Assembly: GCF_001194135.2 (NCBI RefSeq)
Contig: NC_068984.1
Location: 5,827,741 to 5,891,740, forward strand
Source of the DNA: Octopus bimaculoides
Lineage: Eukaryota
Direction: 5' to 3'
DNA: 64,000 nucleotides
The notes below the pieces were generated by a model. The model saw only the letters and a list, made by a program, of their open reading frames with translations, did not search any database and was not told the DNA's origin. The position numbers and the translations under genes are program-made. Below, piece after piece: positions 20,599 to 60,604 of this stretch; the first letter of the stretch is position 1; every line of letters begins with the position of its first letter.

Positions 20599-22575
20599 GT
20601 TTTCACACACTAGGAGCTGGTTTATATTACTGTGTGTGTGTGTAGCCATGCATATATTGTACATGTGGGGGTACAGAACTCTTTTTTTCATTTGGCTAAT
20701 GAAAATTATTGTATTCAAGTTTGACATCCATCATACATCCACCCGTACATCCACCCAATCATACCCGTGTCCATCCATCCATGTATCATTATAAAAATGC
20801 TTAAATCTCTCAATGCGTTCGCTCAAGAGCTGCTTAGTAACTTCGTGTTGTAGCTCAATGCAAGACCAGTCAGAATTGATGCAAACATGCTGTTTACATT
20901 CTCTAGCTCTGACTTGATCGTGTTGTAAAGTTATTACAGGAGCAGTTTCTAATAAATCAGGTCTCTTTCACTAAACATCACATGAAACTAGGAAATCTAC
21001 TGCAAATGGAAAATATTCAAATGAAAGACGTACATTAGAGCACAATAAAACACATTTAATAATATAGCATGACCATACACACATTTACATACGTATAAAC
21101 ATATATATATACGCTTATAAGCCTACATATTTATATATGCACACACACAAACACACACACACTAGTGTGCATACACAAGGATACATATTTATACACAAGT
21201 ATACCTGCTTACTCTCGAATGCATACATGCATAAATGCGTATGTATTCATTCATATACACGCGCATACATAATCAAACTTACATAAACACGCTTATACCC
21301 ATATACATATGAGCACACAAACGTGTATATCCATACATACTATTTTAGATATAATTGAAAATATGGCTGTTTTAGCTTTCTTTTTTATTAGAATTTCTTG
21401 TTATTTTCCTCTGATTTCCTTGAAGTTTCTGGAAAAGCCAACTTTCTCAATTTTCCTAAGAAATAGCAAGGAAATCATACGAAAATATGAAAAGATTTTG
21501 TAAAAAAACATACCCAAGACACAGTCGTCTTCTCAATATAACATTGCGAAAAGAAAAGCTGTTTACCATTTCGTGTATGTGTATTTGTATCTGTTAATGT
21601 AAATGCTATAAATGTAAATGCTTGCTTGTATAGTGGAGAAAATATGCAGATATATGTTTGTGAACAAGGCTCTGTACCTACCTATACAGAGATCTATTAC
21701 ATATATGGGTATGTGTTACATACATACATACAAAGTGGTATGAAAACGTTAGTTCTGTAGCCTATCAACAGTTGGTAGCATGAGGTTGTGTGAGCAGTGA
21801 GAGCTTGCAGTGACTTTCATCAGGCAGTGGTGCCGAGTGACATCGCTGTTTACTTTGCAAGTTGCGAAATCTGTGCTTTTGTGATCACCTGTATGCTGTA
21901 GTCTGCGATTTTTGTCATGGACAGGAAGTTGGAATAAAGGACCAACGGGAAATTTTACGTTAAACTTGGGAAGCCTGCTACAGAGACATTGAGCATGCTT
22001 CGGCAAGCTTACAGGAACGAGGCAATTGGTCGTAAGTAATCTTTCGAATGGTACTGGTAATTCAAAGGCGGAAGAACTTCTCTTGAAGACGATAAGCGAT
22101 CTAGAATACCTGCCATGCGCTTCACCCTCGGAAATGTATTGTGCATGAAGAATTCGCCCCCCCCCCGCCCCGCCGGGCGATCGAAAGTTCAACTGCGACG
22201 TTTTGAAGCGTCTGCGGGAGGACATTCGGCAAAAGTGACGCGATCTATGGAGCGGGAAGAATTGGATTCTTCACGACGACAGCGCACCCTGTCGTCGAGT
22301 TCTACTCACTCACGAGTTTCTCACCAAAAACATAGGATCGCTTTTGCATCCACCCTGTTCTTCAGATTTAGCACCCTGTAGACGAAAATATAGTTCAAAG
22401 GTCGCCGTTTTAATGCCGTTGTCGAGACTAAGAGCGAATTGCAGAAGGTCCTCGATGCGCTTACAGAAAACGACTTCCAGACCGGATTCCAAGAGTGTCA
22501 GGAACGCTAGGACCGGTGTATTGCTGCGCAAGGTAACTATTTCGAAGGAGATGATGTTAAATCTTAGCTAAATAA

Positions 22576-22985
22576 TACAGTTCTATATTTAAGAGATGAG
22601 GAATTATGTACATTATTTATATTTGACGGATATTTGTCATCTTGTTTGATGTTTCGGCTGATATACCTTCCAGCATTCCTTGGGAAAATTTCGAACCTGG
22701 GTTCTCATTCCTAAGGTATTTTTGGATGTTGTTATTATTATTCACGTCACTGCTTGGTATCGAAGCTACTAACCCCAAGATTCCTAGTTCGATTCCAAGC
22801 AGTGACCTGAATAATAATAACAATAATAATAATAACATCGAAAAATACCTTAGGAGTGAGAACCCAGGTTCGAAATTTCCCCAAGACACCTGATGAAGGC
22901 TGGAGGGTTTATCAGCCGAAACGTTGTGCTAGCAACAAGCAAGATGAGGACAAATATCCATCAAATGTAACTAATGCAAATAATG
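22576..22985. mobile_element. SINE family E fold-back insertion (tRNA-like head + hammerhead tail)
   Basis: Minus-strand copy 22578-22782 joined to plus-strand copy 22783-22985, giving arms of roughly 170-200 bp; TSD TTAGCTAAATAA at 22564-22575 and 22986-22997. Confidence 0.85.
22885..22930 (+). ncRNA. Minimal type I hammerhead ribozyme (Penelope-type), intact catalytic core
   Basis: GACAC-CUGAUGA-a-GGCUG[10 nt]CAGCC-GAAA-CG-UU/-GUGCU; helix III is the palindrome AACGUU; predicted cleavage after 22925 (GUU triplet). Confidence 0.7.
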
Positions 22986-23471
22986 TTAGCTAAATAAGTT
23001 TTTTTTTATTAAACATAACTAGCTTTTGATAGATATATACATATAGTGCAATTTAAAAGATTATTGCATCGCACGACCAATAATCAGTATTAAACCCCCA
23101 TATTTATCTCCATGTCTGAAGGATAACGGTATTAAAGTGAACGTATCATTTGGCTGGAATCAGCCCTTGGGTACGTCGCAGAGCTAATATACAAAACAAG
23201 ACAGAAGAGATTGTTCACAAAATACTTAGTTACACAATCTTACGCATATTTCATTAAGAATGATAGTTTAATAATCAAACTGCATCGTCAAATCTACAGA
23301 GATGTTTCACTCTCAATTTTAATTTTATTGAGATTATTGACAATGTTGCCATTGCTAGATAAGCAATGAGGTGAGAACTACTGATACACAGTGTTTCTTC
23401 TACATACATTACTGCTGATTTGGTTATTTATAAATGGGTTTTTCTTCTATTGTCTGTTACCTGGAGTTAGT

Positions 23472-26733: not shown

Positions 26734-26964
26734 AAGGCGGCGAGCTGGTAGAAACGTTAGCACGCCGGGCAAAATGCTTAGCAGTATTTCGTCTGCAGCT
26801 ACGTTCTGAGTTCAAATTCCGCCGAGGTCGACTTTGCCTTTCATCCTTTCGGGGTCGATAAATTAAGTACCAGTTACGCACTGGGGTCGATGTAATCGAC
26901 TTAATCCGTTCGTCTGTTCTTGTTTGTTCCCTCTGTGTTTAGCCCCTTGTGAGAAATAAGAAAT
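26734..26964 (+). mobile_element. SINE family C, full length, tail subfamily 2; central domain resembles Meta/MESC-domain SINEs
   Basis: GGCGGCGAGCTGGTAGAAACGTTAGC head, GAGTTCAAATTCC B-box, GTCGACTTTGCCTTTCATCCTTTCGGGGTCGATAAATTAAGTACCAG core. The Meta/MESC assignment is from memory and unverified. Confidence 0.85.
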
Positions 26965-37072: not shown

Positions 37073-37600
37073 AGTACTTGTTTCAGTCATTTGATTGCGG
37101 CCATGCTGGAACACTGCCTTTAGTCGAGCAAATCGACCCAGGACTGTTCTATGTACAGCAGTAACGACTTCGTTGTCTTGGAAGTAGACTGGATGACGAT
37201 ACGCTAAGTCAGTCTCTAAACCCACCTGTAGCAGTCGTACATCAAACTGTACACACAAGAAATGTTATGTATATATGTGTGTATGTGTGAGTTTCAAACC
37301 GAGACCCCCGACACGATTACCCATCACCGGAAATTTTCTAACCAGACAAAGCCATCTAAAGATTGCTCTCGGGCCTGAAGTAACGGGCGGTTTAAATTCC
37401 TTTATTCTTTTACTTGTTTCAGTCACTTGACTGCAGCCATGCTGGAGCACCGCCTTTAGTTGAACAAATCACCATAGGACTTATTCTTTCTAAGCCTAGT
37501 ACTTATTCTATCAGTCAATTTTGCCGAACCGCTAGGTTACGGGGACGTAAATACACTAACATCGGTTGGCAAGCGGTGGAGAGACAAACACAAATATATA
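37073..37600 (-). mobile_element. Two SINE family A 3' fragments (37073-37150 and 37404-37600)
   Basis: TACTTGTTTCAGTCA...TGCGGCCATGCTGGA tails. Confidence 0.8.
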
Positions 37601-37823
37601 CATATATACATACACACACACATATATATTTTCCTTTTAATTTTAATCCGTCTTTATATATTTCTTTCTATTTTCTATAAATTCTTCTTATTTTGATTTC
37701 ATATTTTGGTATGCCTAACTTAATCTTTTATCCTTTTATGTTTTACCTTTATAGTGTTAAATTGTGTATGGTATTGAGTTTTATATTTTGCATTCCTATT
37801 TACCTTCGCATACACTGGTATAG

Positions 37824-40933: not shown

Positions 40934-41546
40934 CAAATTTTTGCCACAAGGGCAGCTTAGGGGGAGGGGGATTAAATCGATTACATGGACCTCAGTGCGT
41001 AACTGGTACTTATTTAATCGATCCCGAAAGGGTGAAAGGCAAAGTCGACCTCAGTGGTATTTGAACGTAAAGACAGACGTAATGCCAGTAAACATTTTGG
41101 CCGGAGTGCTAACGATTCTGCCAGCCGGCAGCGTTAATAATAAGAATCCTTTCCACAATAGGCACCGGGCGTGACATTATAAGGGCGGGGGATAGTCGAT
41201 TACATCGACCCCAGGGTTTCACTGGTACTTAATTTATCGACGCTGAAAGGATGGAAGGCAAAGTCGACCTCGACGGAATTTGAATTCAGAACGTAGAGAC
41301 AGGCTAAATACCTATTTCTTTACTGCCCACAAGGGGCTACACACAGAGAGGACGAAAAAGGACAGACAAACGGATTAAGTCTATTATATCGACCCCAGTG
41401 CGTAACTGGTACTTATTTAATCGATCCCGAAAGGATGAAAGGCAAAGTCGACCTCGGCGGAATTTGAACTCAGAACGTAGCGGCAGACGAAATACTGCTA
41501 AGCATTTCGCTCGGCGTGCTAACGTTTCTGCCAGCTCGCCGCCTTA
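40934..41546 (-). mobile_element. Three SINE family C copies stacked head to tail or nested
   Basis: GAAAGGCAAAGTCGACCTC core occurs three times (about 41035, 41255, 41440); the third copy has the subfamily 2 tail and truncates the second. Confidence 0.88.
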
Positions 41547-41559
41547 ATAATAATAATTT

Positions 41560-42904: not shown

Positions 42905-43328
42905 TTATTTTTGACTGCGGCCATGCTGGAGCATCGACTTTAGTCGAGCAAATCGACCCCAGGACTTATTCTTTGGAAGCCTAGTACTTATTCTATCTGT
43001 CTCTTTTGCCGAACTGCTAAGTTACGGGGGCGTAAACACACCAGCATCGGTTGTCAAGCGATGTTGTGGGGGACAAACACACACAAAGGTACACACACGC
43101 GCACACACACATNNNNNNNNNNGTGGTTTGCTTCCCGAACCACATTGTTCCAGGTTCACTACACACGTACAAATATATAAGTGTGTGTGTGTTTGTATGA
43201 CGCTTGAATTTCCGTTCATTACATCCGCTTTAGTCGGGCCGAAGCTATAGTAGAAGACACTTGATCAAGGTGCATCGCAGTAGGACTGAACCTGGAACAA
43301 TGTGGTTCGGGAAGCAAACCACTTGCTA
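42905..43328 (-). mobile_element. SINE family A spanning a 10-N gap
   Basis: Tail GACTGCGGCCATGCTGGAGC, body, and head GGACTGAACCTGGAACAATGTGGTTCGGGAAGC. Confidence 0.85.
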
Positions 43329-43379
43329 TACATGTACGCTTGTGCATATATCATCGTGTATATATATAGTATATATAAT

Positions 43380-44040
43380 TATGGAGTGAATTTTAGGGCT
43401 CATAAATCTAATATTTCCTATCCTTCCTTAATACCAGTTCCCATATGTTGTTCATATCTGCACTCGGTCTGCTTAGTAGGTTATTACGTCCCAGCATATG
43501 AGCTGCTTCTTTTAGTTTTCGTATTTTCCAGTGGTGTTCTCTGTCTATTATTTTAGTTTCATCTTAGAGGGGGAGGTGGTCTCCATTTTTCCATACATGA
43601 TCAGCTATACCCGATTTATCAAGATCTCCTCGTTTCATAGCTTATTCTCCCCGTGTCACAGCGATGTTCCTCTACCCTTATTTTGAGGGGCATTTTCGCC
43701 TTTGCATAACCTAGCACAGCTGCATAGGATGGAGTACACGCAGTTCTTGGTAATATTCTCTTCTATTGACGGTTTTACTCGAAGGAGATATTTGCGAAGT
43801 ATTGTATTACTCTTGAATGCTGTTCTGGTGTCATATGGGCCGCATATCTTTTGTATCTTTTCGGAGAAGCCTTTCACATAGGGTAGACAGACTGTGCACA
43901 GTTTATCGGTTTCATCCCCTCTTTTCTTCCAAATTGGAGTCGAGAGTATGCTTTTGGGATAGTTGTTGCTTAATAGATTGTTACTGAGCTGGATCATTTC
44001 TTCGTGGTGGGTAAGTCGCGGTCGTGACCGTTTCATGCTT
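43380..44040 (-). mobile_element. Penelope-like element, RT-linker plus GIY-YIG endonuclease, pseudogenised
   Basis: CLPYVKGFSEKIQKICGPYD...NCVYSILCSCARLCKGE...RVEEHR...KSGIADHVWKNGDHLPL*DETKIIDREHHWKIRKLKEAAHM...WELVLRKDRKY*. Confidence 0.9.
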
Positions 44041-44762
44041 CCTTCACCACCATATACGAGACTAAACTTTACAAATTGTCCTTCCTTTATTAATAAAACG
44101 TCTTATATGTTTTAGATATGACTGCTATATTCAGCACATCACAAATAGAATCTTTGATCAGTTTTGTTGCTGTTGTTGCAGCTTCTTGTCTGTTCTATTT
44201 ATTGTTGTTGTTGCTGCTGTTACTTTTCTTGCTTTGATCAAACGTTGTTGCTACGGTCGGACACTTTGGAAGTTCTTACTATCGTAGCGATGGTTGTTCT
44301 CTCCCCAGTTGTACCTGATGATCATCTTGTATTTCATATCTACTTACTTTATTGATTATCCCACGTCAGCTGATCAAATAAATCTGTGATCAGAGATTCC
44401 AACCGTGACCACTCCGTCCGCGTTTTCATCTTAAAACCTTTTATCTAGGTTTACATCTATCACCCGATTGTTTCAATTTTTACTTTATGGATACGAGGCT
44501 GCTATTTCTAGCAACTCCAGTGGCCTCGTAATGGTAGAGAACGTTTTATGTTCTTGGGACGCGCCCGCGCACACTCAGACTGGAAACTATACTGGGCAAC
44601 ACCGTTTTTGCTGGTATATAAGACTTGTTTTTGACCAATTAGGAGACGCTGAACCATCCAACCTCATTCGTTTTGCCCCATCACCTAAATATTTTGTTTT
44701 ATTACATATCCCTCCCTATTTTTATAAATCACTGTTGAAAAACATCTCGTTACAATGGCAAC

Positions 44763-47117: not shown

Positions 47118-47895
47118 GACAGGCGCAGGCGTGGCTGTGCAATTAGAAGCTGGTTTCCCAACCACATGTTTCCGGGTTCTGTCCCACTACTATAGCCTCA
47201 GGCCCACCAAAGCCTTGTGAGTGGATTTTTGTAGACGGAAACTGAAAGAAGCTCGTCAAGTCGACTAAAACATCTGCGAGATATGCTTAATTCATTGCAA
47301 GTCTTCGTTTTTTATTCTTATCCTAAGCAATTAAATACCTATTTTTTGCCCAACCTTGAGAGACAAAGAGAGAGAGAGAGAAAGAGAGAAATAAAGAGAA
47401 AAAGAAAGAAAGAGAAAAAGGGTGTGTGTGTGTTCTTCACCACTGCTTGATAACAGTGTTGGTGTGTTTACATCACTGTAACTTAACGTTCCGGCAAAAG
47501 ATACCGATAGAATAAGTATCCGGCTTTAAACAAATAAGTACTAAGATCGATTCATTATTTACATTTGACGGATATTTGTCCTCATCTTGTTTGTTGTTAA
47601 CACAACGTTTTGGCTGATGTACTCTCCAGCCTTCATCAGGTGTCTTGAGGAAATTTCGAACCTAGGTTCTCATTCCAAAGGTATTTTTCGATGTTATTAT
47701 TATTATTATTATTATTGTTATTATTCAGGTCACTGCCTGGAATCGAACACGGAATCTTGGGGTTAGTAGCCCAGGCTCTTAACCTCTACGCCATATGCCC
47801 GTGAGCATAAAAACTGTAATATAGAACTGTAAGATCGATTCATTCGACTAAAATTCAAGGCCGTGCTCCAGTATGGCAGCAGTCTAATGACAAAC
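47118..47895 (+). mobile_element. SINE family A in two pieces, tail interrupted by family E
   Basis: Head 47118-47257; body and tail 47430-47556 and 47830-47895. Confidence 0.75.
47557..47829 (-). mobile_element. SINE family E (complete tRNA-like head to hammerhead), with an inverted terminal stub
   Basis: Head GGGCATATGGCGTAGAGGTTAAGAGC...CTACTAACCCC...GTTCGATTCC at 47801 downward; (AAT)n; hammerhead 47599-47644 with G12A; plus-strand stub AATATAGAACTG; 15-bp TSD TAAGATCGATTCATT at 47542-47556 and 47830-47844. Confidence 0.88.
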
Positions 47896-57285: not shown

Positions 57286-59174
57286 TAATTTCGCGGGATC
57301 ATTATAGATAACGGTTTGAGTACCTTTAATATACTGCAGTTTCATTATAGCGTCCCAACGTTTCGAATGTTTTTCTTTCTTTGACACAGCTGAACTATTC
57401 CTGCCAGAGGCTTCTTCCGATTCCATCCGAACTTTGCGTACATGTGTTCATACAACATTTATGGAAACAAAGACTGCGTTTGTTTTCATCATTTCGTATA
57501 TTAACAATTTACTTGCTATGGAGGATCTGAAAGAAATAAAAAAATTTATGCGTCCTCAAATACCCCTTGCACTGTGTATATATAACACGCCGTTTACATA
57601 TTTTAATTACAATATTGACTAAAATCTCTTGATATATTCTTTAGCACAATAAAAGATTGAAGCAAAACACTGTTAATGCATCAATAGGTTATATTTTTAT
57701 CGTATCTACAAAAGAATATGGCAATACTATTAATATTTATTATCAATTCTGTTACATAATGCGAAAATAAATGAAATTTTCTATTAATTGTATTTTAGAT
57801 ATTAAATTTTTGTCTCCGTATTTTTAATTTAAAATTTCCTGTTTTGCATCAGTTTGATCTAAATCCATTGATAATAAACGATTTAGATGAATGGCGAGTC
57901 AACAGGAGATGAAACCGTGTAATTTACAAACTTCAACGAGGTTAAATACAAAAATGTATTTATTTAGATGCGTTCAATTTAAATTAAAACTTTAATTGAA
58001 AACTTTAATATTGATTTTGAAGATGTGTTCGTCTGGCACGTGATTTGGCCAGAGACCTTGTGTTAAAATTGAAGCAATTAAAATCGAGCAAGAAATATTT
58101 TAGCCATCTAAAAGCACACCAACCTGTTATATTCATATTTTATGTATTTCGTGAGATAACAGTTGATTTTAAGTTTCGCTCCAAGCTGGGCTGCTTACGA
58201 CTCAATCCAGTGTATTGAGTACTATGGCAGATAATGTTTGTACTGTTGAAAATATATTTTAATATCAATTAAAGTCACATTAAACAGTAATGATAAAAAT
58301 TAAAGTTGTGTACATTTATATTTAACTTGTTGTGCTTGTATAGAATGTGTTTCTGCGTCATTAAGCTTCATCAGCGACATACATCGAATCTCTTGTTCAT
58401 AAACTATTAAGACTTGCCGCTGCCAGGCGTAAACAGCAAACAATAAATTTTCTGGAGACAGCAAAGCTTTGCTAATCAATAATAAATAAACAAATTAATT
58501 AACAAAAGGCACACTCAGCAGTTGTGATTAAAATAAAGCTGTGTTCATTATATTTATGTTCGTACATCTCACACAGACTGTGTATAAGGAGATTTTCTCT
58601 TCCTAGACAGTTACAGTAGTGAAGGTCTTTCCAAGTTTGGGTGTAAACGAACGTGTTAAACATAATTGTACGCACCCTCACAACCACATAGATATTAAGC
58701 AAAGGAATGAAGATCCTCGTATTATCATTTCTAATTAATAACGATCAATTAAATAATCATTAGAAAATTTTCATATAAATCATTATAATTGGTTTTATAT
58801 GTTCATTTCCTAATTACGTAATTACACCGTCTCATTTAATGAACAAAGGAATTCATGAGCGTCCACAAAAGAAAAACGTATTTTTCTGTGTTTTGTAGAC
58901 GTGACATGAATGCATTTGGCTGATCCCTTCTCCATATAAGGGAGAACATAATTCTGTAGAATACATATTTCTGTTTTGCTTCCGATCTAGTCAACCAGCT
59001 ATCATCAAAGACTTTCTACAAAGTTTTTTTCATCAGCAATAACTCAAAAAAAACAAACAAACAAAAAAAACAGAAATTACAGTAAAAAGAAATTAATATT
59101 TAAAACAACTATCACGAAAAATATAATAACTCACCTTTATGCAACAAAACCTTCACTGATCCATTCGTGCTACG

Positions 59175-59398
59175 AAAATATGGATTTGAAATTTTGGCAA
59201 GAGGTCAGCAATTTCGGAGAAAGAATTAAGGCAACTACATTGACCCCAGTGTTCAACAGGTATTTGTTTTATCGAACCTAAAAGGTTGAATGGTAAAGTC
59301 GACTGCGGCGGCATTTGAATTCAGGACGTAAAGCTGGAAAAATAGTCGCTCAACATTTTTTTCGGGCAGGGTACCTATTTTGCCAGCTCGCCACGTTA
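59175..59398 (-). mobile_element. SINE family C, degenerate
   Basis: TTGACCCCAGTG...GGTAAAGTCGACTGCGGCGGCATTTGAATTCAGGACG. Confidence 0.75.
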
Positions 59399-59417
59399 CT
59401 AAAATATAAATATGAAG

Positions 59418-59727
59418 ACAGTTCTATATTTGAGAGATGAGGAGTTATGTACATTATTTACATCTTTGTGAGATTAAGTTAAAACAGTACAGAGAACACC
59501 ACTGGAAAATACGAAAACTAAAAGAGGCAGCACATATGCTAGGTTTAATAAGCTCCTAGGCAAACCTAGTGCAGATATGGGTAGTATATGGGAACTGGTA
59601 TTAAGGAAGGATAGGAAAATATTAGATTTATAAGCTCTAAAACTCACTTCATAGTTGCCCCTGAGCATATAGCGTGGTGGTTAAGAGCAACAAACAAAAC
59701 GAGGACAAATATCCGTCAAATGTAAAT
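59418..59727. mobile_element. Chimeric fold-back: family E 3' end (-), Penelope endonuclease 3' fragment (+), family E head and tail stub (+)
   Basis: 59418-59463 matches 22578-22625; 59464-59660 (REHHWKIRKLKEAAHML...WELVLRKDRK) matches the reverse complement of 43380-43560; 59663-59688 is the E head; 59689-59727 is the E tail. Confidence 0.85.
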
Positions 59728-60110
59728 ATTACTCTTTTACTTGTTTCAGTCATTTGACTGCGGCCATGGTGGAGCACCGCCTTTTAGTCGAGCAAATCGA
59801 CGCCAGGACTTATTCTTTGGAAGCCTAGTACTTATTCTATCGGTCTTTTTTGCCGAACCGCTAGGTTACGGGACGTAAACACACCAGCATCGGTTGTCAA
59901 GCGATGTTGGGGGGACAAACACAGACACACAAACATATACACACACATACATATATACGACGGGCTTCTTTCAGTTTCCATCTACCAAATCCACTTACAA
60001 GGCTTTGGTCGGCCCGAGGCTATAGTAGAAGACATTTGTCCAAGGTGCCACGCAGTGGGACTGAACCCGGAACCGTGTGGTTGGTAAGCAAGCTACTTAC
60101 CACACGGCCG
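59728..60110 (-). mobile_element. SINE family A, full length
   Basis: Complete tail-to-head match with the 842 copy. Confidence 0.92.
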
Positions 60111-60604
60111 ATCTATTAATGTTGTATTAGATTCGAAAACAAATATAATGAACATAGCTTTATTTTAATCCCCACTGCTCAGAGTGCCCTTTGTTAATTA
60201 ATTTGTTTATTTATTATAGATTAGCAAAGCTTTGCTGTCTCCAGAAAATTTATTGGTTGCTGTTTACGTATGGCAGCGGCAAACTTGACAATGATTTTCA
60301 ATGCTTTAAATGTTTTCTTTCTAGATATTGGAAAATGCAAACAATCATATTTTGAGACTAAGCTCAACAATAAACGGGGTTTATGAAATTGGAACCAAAA
60401 TTTAATACTTACAACCTTCAGTGATTATAAAAAAATAAACCACCATTTGTTATGAAATAATGGATGTAAAATATCTTCTGGACTGAAAATTGAACATTCT
60501 TACTTAATATATTTTAACAGACATTAAAGGAATTTAAATGAACCAGGAAAATAATGAGAGAAATTACAAAAATCGATCGTTCATGACAAAAGAAATTAGT
60601 TCGT

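What the first reader, a model, noticed from the sequence alone, without database searches (positions are those of the whole stretch)
59418..59727. Penelope endonuclease 3' fragment captured inside a family E insertion
SEEN: about 197 bp encoding REHHWKIRKLKEAAHML...WELVLRKDRK* sits between an inverted family E 3' end and a family E head fused directly to its tail stub. By eye it is roughly 80% identical to the PLE at 43380-43560, but extends slightly further 3' and stops at CCCCTGA, where a hammerhead CTGATGA could begin. INFERRED: RT template switching between PLE RNA and SINE RNA in a single integration event, which would be physical evidence of the partnership. Independent nested insertion is the alternative.
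Basis: partly seen in the sequence, partly recalled or inferred. Interest (0 to 1): 0.7.

Follow-up and report, generated by a model that had tools for sequence, protein, structure and literature searches.

The report
Truncated Penelope copy with SINE tail
This 310-base block is one dead insertion made by a Penelope-type jumping gene, with the end of that gene joined to the head and tail of a short tRNA-like repeat; a second animal genome shows the same join as an inherited layout, so a one-off copying accident is the less likely explanation.

Summary
Window 59464-59656 is an 83-85% copy of the 3' end of the Penelope-like element (PLE) reading frame at 43377-43572. It lies between an inverted family E 3' end (59418-59463) and an E head (59665-88, 21/24) fused directly to an E tail (59689-59727).

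- All three E insertions in the window have PLE-type anatomy: an inverted arm starting exactly at ACAGTTCTATATT, a direct arm ending at ..CAAATGTAAAT, and AT-rich 12-15 bp target duplications (TSDs).
- The E tail and its 38-nt extension are about 80% identical to PLE 3' tails in an unrelated eukaryote assembly (ENA ERZ21867824).
- In that assembly, 6 of 10 PLE copies show the same collinear layout: ORF end, UTR, tRNA-like module, hammerhead-like tail. One copy (L010) is an intact analogue of this block, with flanking direct repeats.

The best reading is an ordinary 5'-truncated PLE insertion whose 3' region natively carries family E, plus a head-to-tail internal deletion. A template switch is not excluded. 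A nested insertion is not supported. The suggested hammerhead start at CCCCTGA is not supported either, because that motif lies in the part deleted from this copy.

The parts
59407..59417 (.). Candidate left target-site duplication TAAATAT (59407-59413), followed by 4 nt of filler, GAAG
   Evidence: Read directly from the sequence. TAAATAT recurs at 59723-59729. The match is short, AT-rich and overlaps E's own end, so it is not significant on its own.
59418..59463 (-). Inverted arm: the last 8 nt of the E/PLE 3' end plus the 38-nt 'tail extension'. Its reverse complement reads ATGTAAAT|AATGTACATAACTCCTCATCTCTCAAATATAGAACTGT.
   Evidence: 43/46 identical to 22577-22622. It starts at the same ACAGTTCTATATT as the other two E insertions. 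The extension is conserved in organism Z locus L006.
59464..59625 (+). Last ~162 nt of the PLE ORF (C-terminal part of the endonuclease region), frameshifted. The ancestral TAG stop is at 59623-59625.
   Evidence: tblastn to organism Z PLE protein P0001 covers residues 155-197.
59626..59662 (+). PLE 3' UTR. 59626-59656 is shared with the 43377 copy; 59657-59662 (GCCCCT) is unassigned.
   Evidence: The UTR motif ATTAGATTTATAAGCTCTAAAACTCAC is homologous to the leader just upstream of the tRNA-like head in organism Z.
59665..59688 (+). Family E tRNA-like head fragment carrying the A-box region, GCATATAGCGTGGTGGTTAAGAGC
   Evidence: 21/24 ungapped match to E copy 47775-47798rc; score 33 against a shuffle maximum of 19.
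59689..59728 (+). Family E 3' tail stub, ending at the usual E 3' end ..CCGTCAAATGTAAAT(A). About 230 nt of E between head and tail are missing (B box, AAT repeat, body, hammerhead-like motif).
   Evidence: The junction GGTTAAGAG|C|AACAAAC shares a C and a nearby GTTAA with the E tail sequence GTGTTAACAACAAAC.
43377..44050 (-). Second, longer, degenerate PLE 3' fragment, used here as the reference. It covers ~220 aa of the C-terminal ORF with stops and frameshifts.
   Evidence: It is 65-75% nt identical to organism Z PLE copies.
47558..47831 (-). Full-length family E copy. In order: a 12-nt inverted stub, a leader, the tRNA-like head with A and B boxes, an (AAT)n run, the body, the hammerhead-like motif and the tail. 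It is nested in another SINE, with the TSD AATGAATCGATCTTA at 47543-47557 and 47832-47846.
22577..22986 (+). Family E foldback insertion: an inverted 5'-truncated arm with the extension, then a direct 5'-truncated arm. TSD TTAGCTAAATAA at 22565-22576 and 22987-22998. The intact CTGATGA..GAAAC motif is at 22890-22922.

Best explanation
Window 59418-59728 is a single insertion unit, dead on arrival, made by a Penelope-like (RT plus C-terminal GIY-YIG-type nuclease) retrotransposon.

Mechanism (inferred, by analogy with the Anolis element PAc): the nuclease cuts both strands of an AT-rich target, and each 3' end primes reverse transcription.
- One cDNA started at the distal RT start site ('site 2', ...GAACTGT-3'). 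It ran only 46 nt and forms the short inverted arm.
- The other cDNA started at the proximal site ('site 1', ...CAAATGTAAAT-3') and forms the direct arm.

I propose that the template of the direct arm was a PLE RNA whose 3' region natively contains the family E module. That region reads, in order: ORF end, about 37 nt of UTR, tRNA-like head, body, hammerhead-like motif, tail. Reverse transcription stopped 162 nt inside the ORF, which is ordinary 5' truncation. About 230 nt of E were lost between head and tail at a C/GTTAA microhomology, either by an intramolecular RT jump or by a later deletion.

Family E is therefore the 3' (pseudo-LTR-like) module of this PLE lineage, or a non-autonomous derivative of it, and is mobilised by the PLE machinery.

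Shown:
- the segment boundaries and identities;
- the shared insertion anatomy of three E copies;
- homology of the E tail to PLE tails;
- the conserved ORF-module-tail layout, and an intact analogue of this block, in a second genome.

Inferred:
- that the octopus-type PLE natively carries E;
- the two-strand priming;
- the timing of the internal deletion.
For: (1) All three E insertions in the window start with an inverted arm at exactly ACAGTTCTATATT. Their direct arms end within ..CAAATGTAAAT(AATGT), and two are flanked by 12 and 15 bp TSDs. This matches published PLE hallmarks: an inverted 5'-truncated copy, a 30-40 bp tail extension at one end, two RT start sites, and extension from both strands (PMC8557442; PMC11167929).

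(2) The E tail is homologous to PLE 3' ends elsewhere. 22888-22953 matches L001 6924-6989 at 77%, E=1.5e-9. 47553-47642 matches L006 624-710 at 78.9%, E=1e-13. Tail plus extension are about 80% identical over ~140 nt to L006. In L003 and L004 that tail is attached directly to PLE ORFs.

(3) In organism Z, six PLE copies share one collinear junction: L001, L007, L008, L009, L010 and L011. The order is ORF end, UTR, leader, tRNA-like head, body, tail. Free SINE copies start inside the same UTR or leader.

(4) The octopus PLE ORF end and UTR are significantly similar to that leader (score 33 against a shuffle maximum of 25, 0/500). The head follows 9-17 nt after the AAAAYTSAC motif in both species.

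(5) L010 2046-3056 has a 55-nt inverted arm from site 2 abutting a 5'-truncated PLE ORF, then UTR, module and tail ending at site 1. It is flanked by an AATGTAGTT repeat. It is an intact analogue of this block. L006 590-952 is an E-like foldback with an 11-15 bp TSD.

(6) The direct-arm 5' ends of the three window copies fall inside the head, about 6-17 nt upstream of it, and 200 nt upstream in the ORF. This is what random 5' truncation of one long RNA would give.
Against: - No intact octopus-type PLE with its native 3' end was available, so native PLE-E continuity in this genome rests on cross-species collinearity.
- The tRNA-like heads of E and of the organism Z module are not demonstrably homologous beyond generic tRNA-likeness (38-48 of 500 shuffles reach the score for L008 and L001; E head against an unrelated window SINE head scores as well).
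- The single full-length E copy has 17 nt upstream of its head that do not resemble the PLE UTR.
- The other PLE copy loses homology at the same UTR position and is followed by AT-rich sequence and a different SINE, not by E.
- The TSD of this block is only a 7-nt AT-rich candidate.
- The GIY-YIG identity of the ORF rests on motif inspection. Pfam does not call it and the AlphaFold model was unusable.
Confidence: 0.55

Rival explanations
1. During this integration the PLE reverse transcriptase started on a free family E (Pol III) RNA, copied the tail, jumped to the head, reached the 5' end of E RNA, then switched to a PLE mRNA in its 3' UTR and copied about 200 nt more. The product was joined to the short inverted arm.
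For: - The E homology begins within about 2 nt of the tRNA-like +1, right after the PLE UTR.
- The only full-length E copy shows no PLE UTR upstream of its head.
- The second PLE copy ends its homology at the same UTR point (CATARTT) and is followed in the same orientation by another SINE. An RNA end acting as a preferred acceptor site would produce this.
- A second discontinuity (head to tail) in the same arm fits a jump-prone reverse transcription.
- The block looks like one insertion unit.
Against: The same junction position (head 9-17 nt after the conserved UTR motif) is an inherited feature of six diverged PLE copies in another genome. An intact analogue exists there. An independent switch landing in the same ~10-nt window of a multi-kb RNA would therefore be a coincidence, unless that site is a mechanistic hotspot. 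One of three E insertions carrying PLE ORF sequence is a high frequency for a rare accident.
Confidence: 0.25
2. Independent nested insertion. A 5'-truncated PLE fragment inserted into a pre-existing family E copy, and later deletions removed the rest.
For: Nesting of repeats is common in this window; for example, E copy 47558-47831 sits inside another SINE with a clean TSD.
Against: - There is no direct repeat of 4 nt or more flanking 59464-59662: the junctions read TTTACAT|CTTTGTG and GCCCCT|GAGCAT.
- The PLE piece lacks any 3' tail or RT start site of its own.
- The E parts on its two sides (antisense 3' end; sense head) are not contiguous in E, so at least two further deletions would be needed, plus the head-tail fusion.
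Confidence: 0.04
3. A secondary rearrangement or artefact. This could be ectopic recombination or gene conversion between separate PLE and E copies, microhomology-mediated deletions after insertion, or a mis-join in a repeat-rich assembly with gaps.
For: The window contains 1987 N. An assembly gap with inverted SINE-head duplicates lies next to the other PLE copy at 43114-43165. PLE tandem and inverted structures are known to disturb assemblies (PMC8557442). The head-tail junction has microhomology.
Against: There are no Ns in or near 59100-60200. Every junction is collinear with a known PLE insertion architecture that is reproduced in long-read contigs of another genome.
Confidence: 0.1

Closest known systems
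Canonical EN+ Penelope-like elements (Penelope/Poseidon type, e.g. PAc of Anolis): complex insertions with pseudo-LTRs, inverted 5'-truncated copies and a 30-40 bp tail extension
   Same: Frequent 5' truncation. An inverted arm abutting the direct copy. A 38-nt extension present on one arm only, bounded by two fixed start points. AT-rich targets. A hammerhead-like motif upstream of the 3' end.
   Different: The 3' region here contains a tRNA-like (A/B-box) module. Such a module was not described for PLE pseudo-LTRs in the papers I could read. The RT part is absent from both window copies. Pfam does not call GIY-YIG on the ORF remnant.
Non-LTR retrozymes and other non-autonomous PLE derivatives (pLTR-derived; short non-autonomous Penelope elements of butterflies; MRC1/Chlamys)
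   Same: Family E is short and non-coding, carries a type I-like hammerhead motif, and shares its 3' end with a PLE. This parallels what is proposed for retrozymes and pLTRs.
   Different: E copies here are dispersed, TSD-flanked single or foldback insertions with a tRNA-like head. They are not tandem arrays of ribozyme units. No evidence for circular RNA was obtainable.
tRNA-derived SINEs that share a 3' tail with a partner LINE (e.g. MIR/L2; general SINE-LINE model)
   Same: A composite of tRNA-like head, body and a tail homologous to the autonomous partner's 3' end.
   Different: The partner is a PLE rather than an APE/RLE LINE, and insertions show PLE-specific inverted arms. In the second genome the whole SINE-like unit sits inside the partner's 3' region, and free copies begin in partner UTR sequence.
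Template-switch chimeric retrocopies such as U6-L1 chimeras in mammals (recalled from my own knowledge, Buzdin et al. 2002; not read here)
   Same: Two unrelated RNAs joined head-to-tail in one TSD-flanked retrocopy.
   Different: In those chimeras the autonomous element's 3' end is at the 3' side and the small RNA at the 5' side. Here the order is reversed, and the junction is conserved across species.

Membership tests
Penelope-like element (EN+) | Reverse transcriptase of the PLE/TERT-related clade in the same ORF | tested here: inconclusive
   Both window copies are 5'-truncated and hold no RT. Longer relatives of the same C-terminal domain in organism Z carry Pfam RVT_1 upstream (P0018, P0020, P0083). 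Clade placement was not tested.
Penelope-like element (EN+) | C-terminal GIY-YIG endonuclease with the CCHH pattern | tested here: inconclusive
   By inspection, the consensus of 28 relatives reads ..NCVYSIPCSCGKIYKGETGRPLKVRLEEHRKAV..ADHIW... Pfam GIY-YIG gave no hit. A profile search of the PDB found nothing. The AlphaFold2 model had pLDDT 53 and was unusable.
Penelope-like element (EN+) | Insertion anatomy: 5' truncation, an adjacent inverted 5'-truncated copy, and a 30-40 bp tail extension at one end | tested here: met
   Seen in three window insertions (22577-22986, 47558-47831, 59418-59728) and two in organism Z (L006 590-952, L010 2046-3056). Criteria taken from PMC8557442 and PMC11167929.
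Penelope-like element (EN+) | Hammerhead ribozyme motif in the pseudo-LTR / 3' region | tested here: inconclusive
   CTGATGA..GAAAC with helices I and II is present in E (22890-22922). Across 10 sequences, 76% of cells are paired against 25-45% when the partners are slid, and 3 pairs show compensatory changes. The shuffle control was not significant, and Rfam hammerhead models found nothing. The motif is absent from the 59418-59728 copy itself.
tRNA-derived SINE | Internal Pol III promoter (A and B boxes) in a tRNA-like head | tested here: inconclusive
   By inspection, TGGCGTAGAGG lies at about +8 and GTGTTCGATTCC at about +51 of the head in copy 47558-47831. ARAGORN and the Rfam tRNA model do not call it. 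The 59665-88 fragment keeps only the A-box region.
tRNA-derived SINE | 3' tail shared with an autonomous partner | tested here: met
   The E tail is homologous to tails attached to PLE ORFs in organism Z. In the window the only physical link is the block under study.
tRNA-derived SINE | A uniform 5' end at the Pol III start in most copies | not testable with these tools
   Only three copies are in the window, with three different 5' ends. No further sequence of this species could be reached.
Template-switch chimeric retrocopy | One TSD around the whole chimera, with junction points that vary among independent chimeras | tested here: inconclusive
   Only a 7-nt AT-rich candidate TSD was found (59407-13 / 59723-29). 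In organism Z the junction is constant across six copies, which argues for inheritance rather than repeated switching.

The most novel reading that the evidence does not exclude
A lineage of Penelope-like elements, shared by this cephalopod-like genome and a second, distant animal genome, has a tRNA-like Pol III promoter module built into its own 3' region, upstream of a hammerhead-bearing tail. The element's pseudo-LTR would then double as a tRNA-headed SINE (family E). That would be a SINE class driven by GIY-YIG/PLE machinery rather than by a LINE. Blocks such as 59418-59728 would record either co-transcription or RT jumping between the two RNAs.
Probability: 0.4. Interest if true: 0.65.

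Novelty: new variant of a known kind. Interest (0 to 1): 0.45.

Why it matters
PLEs are the least understood retrotransposon order, and their non-autonomous partners are only now being defined (retrozymes as pLTR derivatives). SINEs make up roughly a tenth of octopus genomes, yet in the literature I searched no autonomous driver is named for them, and I found no SINE assigned to a PLE partner.

If family E is the 3' module of a PLE, three things would follow:
- a concrete driver for at least one cephalopod SINE family;
- a case where a Pol III promoter module has been built into a PLE;
- natural sequence records of the two RT start sites and two-strand priming, so far seen only in vitro for one lizard element.

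The single locus alone is an ordinary dead copy. Its value is as an entry point to that relationship.

Tried and rejected
- **Rfam.** The gathering threshold on the whole window, and the E-value threshold on E copies and organism Z tails, gave no hammerhead or tRNA hit. Only spurious miRNA-hairpin matches to the E foldback appeared.
- **ARAGORN.** No tRNA was found in the window.
- **Pfam.** No GIY-YIG call on the window-derived ORF, on organism Z fragments or on their consensus.
- **PDB profile search.** Only chance hits.
- **AlphaFold2 on P0001 with 28 relatives.** pLDDT was 53 and the nuclease region was below 50, so I ran no fold search.
- **JGI metagenome scan for the E tail.** One chance bacterial match, L005. 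No sequence of the window's own species was found in the protein database (all hits come from one ENA assembly).
- **Reading 59663-59690 as a degraded hammerhead/tail rather than the E head.** This is weaker: score 19 with gaps against 33 ungapped.
- **Reading the PLE UTR 59630-59669 as an inverted E head (palindrome).** Rejected, because the same UTR is present in the independent PLE copy at 43377 and in organism Z leaders.
- **Similarity between the leader of E copy 47558-47831 and the PLE UTR.** None found.
- **Homology of E and organism Z tRNA-like heads.** Not significant.
- **Homology of the 38-nt extension to L001/L003/L004 tails.** Weak. It became clear only with L006.
- **A TSD for the PLE piece alone.** None.
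- **E sequence downstream of the SINE that follows the 43377 PLE copy.** None.

Full report
**1. What is there**

- 59471-59656 matches the minus strand of 43377-43564 at 84.7% over 189 columns (E=1.6e-53). With weaker ends, the homology runs from 59464 to 59656 (163/197).
- The segment encodes the end of an ORF, LCEIKLKQYREHHWKIRKLKEAAHML../..SADMGSIWELVLRKDRK. It is broken by a frameshift and by a 1-nt insertion before the ancestral TAG at 59623-25.
- The reference copy at 43377-44050(-) is itself a degenerate, 5'-truncated C-terminal ORF fragment of about 220 codons.
- tblastn with related proteins finds only these two pieces in the 64 kb.

**2. The flanks, and what 'family E' is**

BLAST of the flanks and reading of the matching places define family E.

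The one full-length copy is 47831->47558 on the minus strand. It is nested in another SINE and flanked by the 15-bp duplication AATGAATCGATCTTA. In sense orientation it reads, in order:
- a 12-nt stub, CAGTTCTATATT;
- about 17 nt of leader;
- a tRNA-like head, GGGCATATGGCGTAGAGGTTAAGAGCC...GTGTTCGATTCC, with A- and B-box-like motifs at the spacing of a tRNA gene;
- an (AAT)n run and a body;
- CCTGATGAAGGCTGG..CAGCC(G/A)AAACGTTGTG;
- the tail ..GATGAGGACAAATATCCGTCAAATGTAAAT.

The copy at 22577-22986 (12-bp TSD TTAGCTAAATAA) is a foldback. It has an inverted, 5'-truncated E arm followed by a direct, 5'-truncated E arm, and the arms are 73% complementary.

Turned to sense, the inverted arm carries 38 extra nt after the usual 3' end: AATGTACATAATTCCTCATCTCTTAAATATAGAACTGT.

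In the block under study:
- 59418-59463 is that extension plus the last 8 nt of E, in antisense (43/46 to the 22577 copy);
- 59665-59688 is the E head (21/24 ungapped; score 33 against a shuffle maximum of 19);
- 59689-59727 is the E tail (87-95%).

About 230 nt of E are missing between head and tail: the B box, the AAT run, the body and the CTGATGA..GAAAC motif. The junction GGTTAAGAG|C|AACAAAC shares a C and a nearby GTTAA with the tail sequence GTGTTAACAACAAAC.

**3. The insertions have Penelope-type anatomy**

In all three E insertions the left extremity is the same ACAGTTCTATATT, the reverse complement of the end of the extension. The inverted arms are 12, 46 and about 190 nt long. All three direct arms end within ..CAAATGTAAAT(AATGT). 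There are thus two fixed 3' start points 38 nt apart, one used by each arm.

This is what the literature gives as peculiar to PLEs:
- frequent 5' truncation, an inverted 5'-truncated copy adjacent to the direct one, and a 30-40 bp 'tail' present at only one end (PMC8557442);
- for the Anolis element PAc in vitro, cleavage and extension of both DNA strands, with reverse transcription starting at two adjacent internal sites whose spacing corresponds to the tail (PMC11167929).

The targets are AT-rich. For the block itself I could find only a 7-nt candidate duplication (TAAATAT, 59407-13 and 59723-29) with 4 nt of filler. It lies between two other SINEs (59178-59406 and 59730-60109, both minus), so the TSD remains unproven.

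**4. Evidence from elsewhere**

A protein search with the 43377-44050 translation found seven relatives. A second search with the best of them found 557. All come from one ENA assembly, ERZ21867824, whose contigs reach 1 Mb. It is a eukaryote that I call organism Z.

Organism Z shares none of the window's SINE families. Only the PLE ORF (65-75% nt identity) and the E tail are in common. Longer relatives carry Pfam RVT_1 upstream of this C-terminal domain.

I fetched ten loci, L001-L004 and L006-L011.

(a) In L003 and L004 the ORF end is followed, after about 30-60 nt, by a ~150-nt tail containing CTGAAGAAGACCGGAGGGCACATCGGCCGAAACGTTGT..GATGAGGATAAT. This tail is homologous to the E tail:
- 77% over 66 nt, E=1.5e-9;
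- 0 of 500 shuffles reach the score;
- 78.9% over 90 nt against L006, E=1e-13.

(b) L006 590-952 is an E-like foldback. Its inverted arm carries an extension about 80% identical to the octopus one. Its direct arm ends at CAAATGTAAATAA. The unit is flanked by an 11-15 bp duplication, AATACAAAGAG. The extension is therefore templated element sequence, conserved between genomes.

(c) In L001, L007, L008, L009, L010 and L011 the ORF end is followed by the same collinear series: UTR, leader, tRNA-like head with a B box, body, and the hammerhead-like tail. The copies are 75-91% identical to one another. Free SINE-like copies (L003 3601-4005rc, L004 4600-5030rc) begin inside the same UTR or leader. 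In that genome the tRNA-like SINE module is therefore an integral part of the 3' region of a multi-copy PLE subfamily, not the result of repeated accidents. My sampling of L009-L011 was biased towards relatives of L001.

(d) The leader just upstream of the organism Z head is significantly similar to the octopus ORF end and UTR:
- octopus: GAACTGGTATTAAGGAAGGATAGGAAATATTAGATTTATGAGCCCTAAAATTCAC
- organism Z: GAACTGGTATCAAAAGAACATTAGGTTTATAAGGCCCCAAAATTGAC

The score is 33 against a shuffle maximum of 25. In both genomes the head starts 9-17 nt after the AAAAYTSAC motif.

(e) L010 2046-3056 has a 55-nt inverted arm starting at the distal site. It abuts a 5'-truncated PLE ORF, followed by UTR, module and a tail that ends at the proximal site. 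The unit is flanked by AATGTAGTT on both sides. It is the same construction as window 59418-59728, but with the module intact.

**5. The hammerhead question**

The E tail has CUGAUGA, a 5-bp helix II, GAAAC and the palindrome ACGU followed by U. This is the format of the minimal, dimer-dependent type I hammerheads described for PLEs (PMC7761336).

On an ungapped alignment of ten octopus and organism Z sequences (A2):
- the proposed helices I and II pair in 76% of cells, against 25-45% when the partners are slid;
- three pairs show compensatory changes (CG/UA twice, GC/AU once);
- the shuffle control is not significant with so few related sequences;
- no Rfam hammerhead model scores.

I call it hammerhead-like and plausible, but not proven.

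After CCCCTGA the block continues GCATATAGCG.., which is the E head. The CTGATGA motif lies in the deleted part.

**6. Explanations**

*Best (0.55).* The block is one PLE-type insertion whose direct arm copies a PLE RNA that natively runs from the ORF through a short UTR into the E module. It is an ordinary 5'-truncated PLE copy, plus an internal head-to-tail deletion of unknown timing. Family E is the 3' module, or a pLTR-like non-autonomous derivative, of that PLE.

Four observations favour it:
- E begins almost exactly at the tRNA-like +1;
- the only full-length E copy has no recognisable PLE UTR upstream of its head, although 11 of its 17 leader nt look like a second partial ACAGTTCTATAT;
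- the other PLE copy loses homology at the same UTR point and is followed by a different SINE;
- the heads of the two genomes are not demonstrably homologous.

Against it stands the conserved junction position and the intact analogue in organism Z.

*Nested insertion (0.04).* It fails on three counts: the PLE piece has no TSD and no tail of its own, and the flanking E parts are not contiguous in E.

*Later rearrangement or misassembly (0.1).* This cannot be excluded without reads.

**7. Comparison and novelty**

As an object, the block is a member of a known kind: a truncated, rearranged PLE insertion.

What is less ordinary is the relationship it exposes. A tRNA-headed, hammerhead-tailed short repeat shares its 3' end, extension and insertion anatomy with a PLE. 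In a second genome it sits inside the PLE's own 3' region.

The papers I could search describe non-autonomous PLE derivatives (retrozymes related to pLTRs; short non-autonomous Penelope elements; MRC1/Chlamys). Octopus repeat surveys list PLEs and thousands of unclassified SINEs separately. I found no description of a tRNA-type SINE partnered with a PLE. That is absence within a limited library, not proof of novelty.

I rate it a new variant of a known kind, interest 0.45.

**8. Limits**

- No further sequence of the window's species could be reached, so copy numbers, consensus sequences and empty sites are untested.
- PLE identity of the ORF rests on three things: RT-bearing relatives, motif inspection (VYSIPCSCGKIYKGETGRPLKVRLEEH..ADH) and the insertion hallmarks. 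Pfam, PDB and structure prediction did not confirm a GIY-YIG fold.
- The identity of organism Z is unknown.

Noticed in passing
window 43114-43380: The longer PLE fragment (43377-44050, minus) loses homology at the same UTR position as the block under study. It is followed by 49 nt of AT-rich sequence and then, in the same orientation, by a nearly full-length copy of the abundant ~390-bp SINE. That region also holds an assembly gap (N at 43114-43126) and an inverted duplicate of the SINE head (43127-43165). It could be a second PLE-SINE join or an assembly problem.
   Followed up: partly
window 59730-60109 and other copies (847-1255, 37402-37628): The abundant ~390-bp tRNA-type SINE ends ..GCCGCAGTCAAATGACTGAAACAAGTAAAAGAGTA. 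Its CCGCAGTCAAATG resembles the CCGTCAAATG at the RT start region of family E. It might use the same machinery. I saw no hammerhead-like motif in it.
   Followed up: no
window 21900-22565 (+): A degenerate, internally deleted mariner-type transposase remnant. I recognised the N-terminal HTH-like ..KLGKPATETLSMLRQAYRNEA.. and the C-terminal ..QERWDRCIAAQGNYFEGDDVKS* by eye only. The E foldback at 22577 inserted right at its stop codon.
   Followed up: partly
window 22703-22861: The long hairpin of the E foldback copy gives sub-threshold matches to several Rfam miRNA precursor models (mir-2300, MIR845_1, mir-548). These reflect the inverted-repeat structure and are not miRNA genes.
   Followed up: yes
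L003 5729-5833 and L004 5733-5892 versus L001, L008-L011: Organism Z has two PLE 3'-end forms. One has the tRNA-like module between UTR and tail; the other has the UTR joined to the tail directly. The module-less L003 UTR is the same sequence as the leader of free SINE copies. One form therefore derives from the other by insertion or deletion of the module.
   Followed up: partly
L001 6590-6700; L004 5030-5075: Organism Z leaders contain a relic of a second ORF end (GAACTGGTATCAAAAGAACATTAGG). The relic is closer to the octopus-type ORF end than to the ORF it follows. This suggests an old fusion of a 5'-truncated element of one PLE lineage behind the ORF of another. In L004, a 24-nt poly(T) separates an inverted SINE copy from a truncated PLE.
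   Followed up: no
window 59178-59406 (-): Another tRNA-type SINE family lies immediately left of the block, with further copies at 26739-26911, 41374-41555 and elsewhere. A possible 9-nt duplication, AAAATATAA, flanks it at ~59121-59131 and 59402-59410.
   Followed up: no
L009 2900-2945: One organism Z copy has a deletion inside the hammerhead-like helix II (CTGAAGAAGGCCGAAAC). Individual copies therefore lose the motif readily.
   Followed up: no
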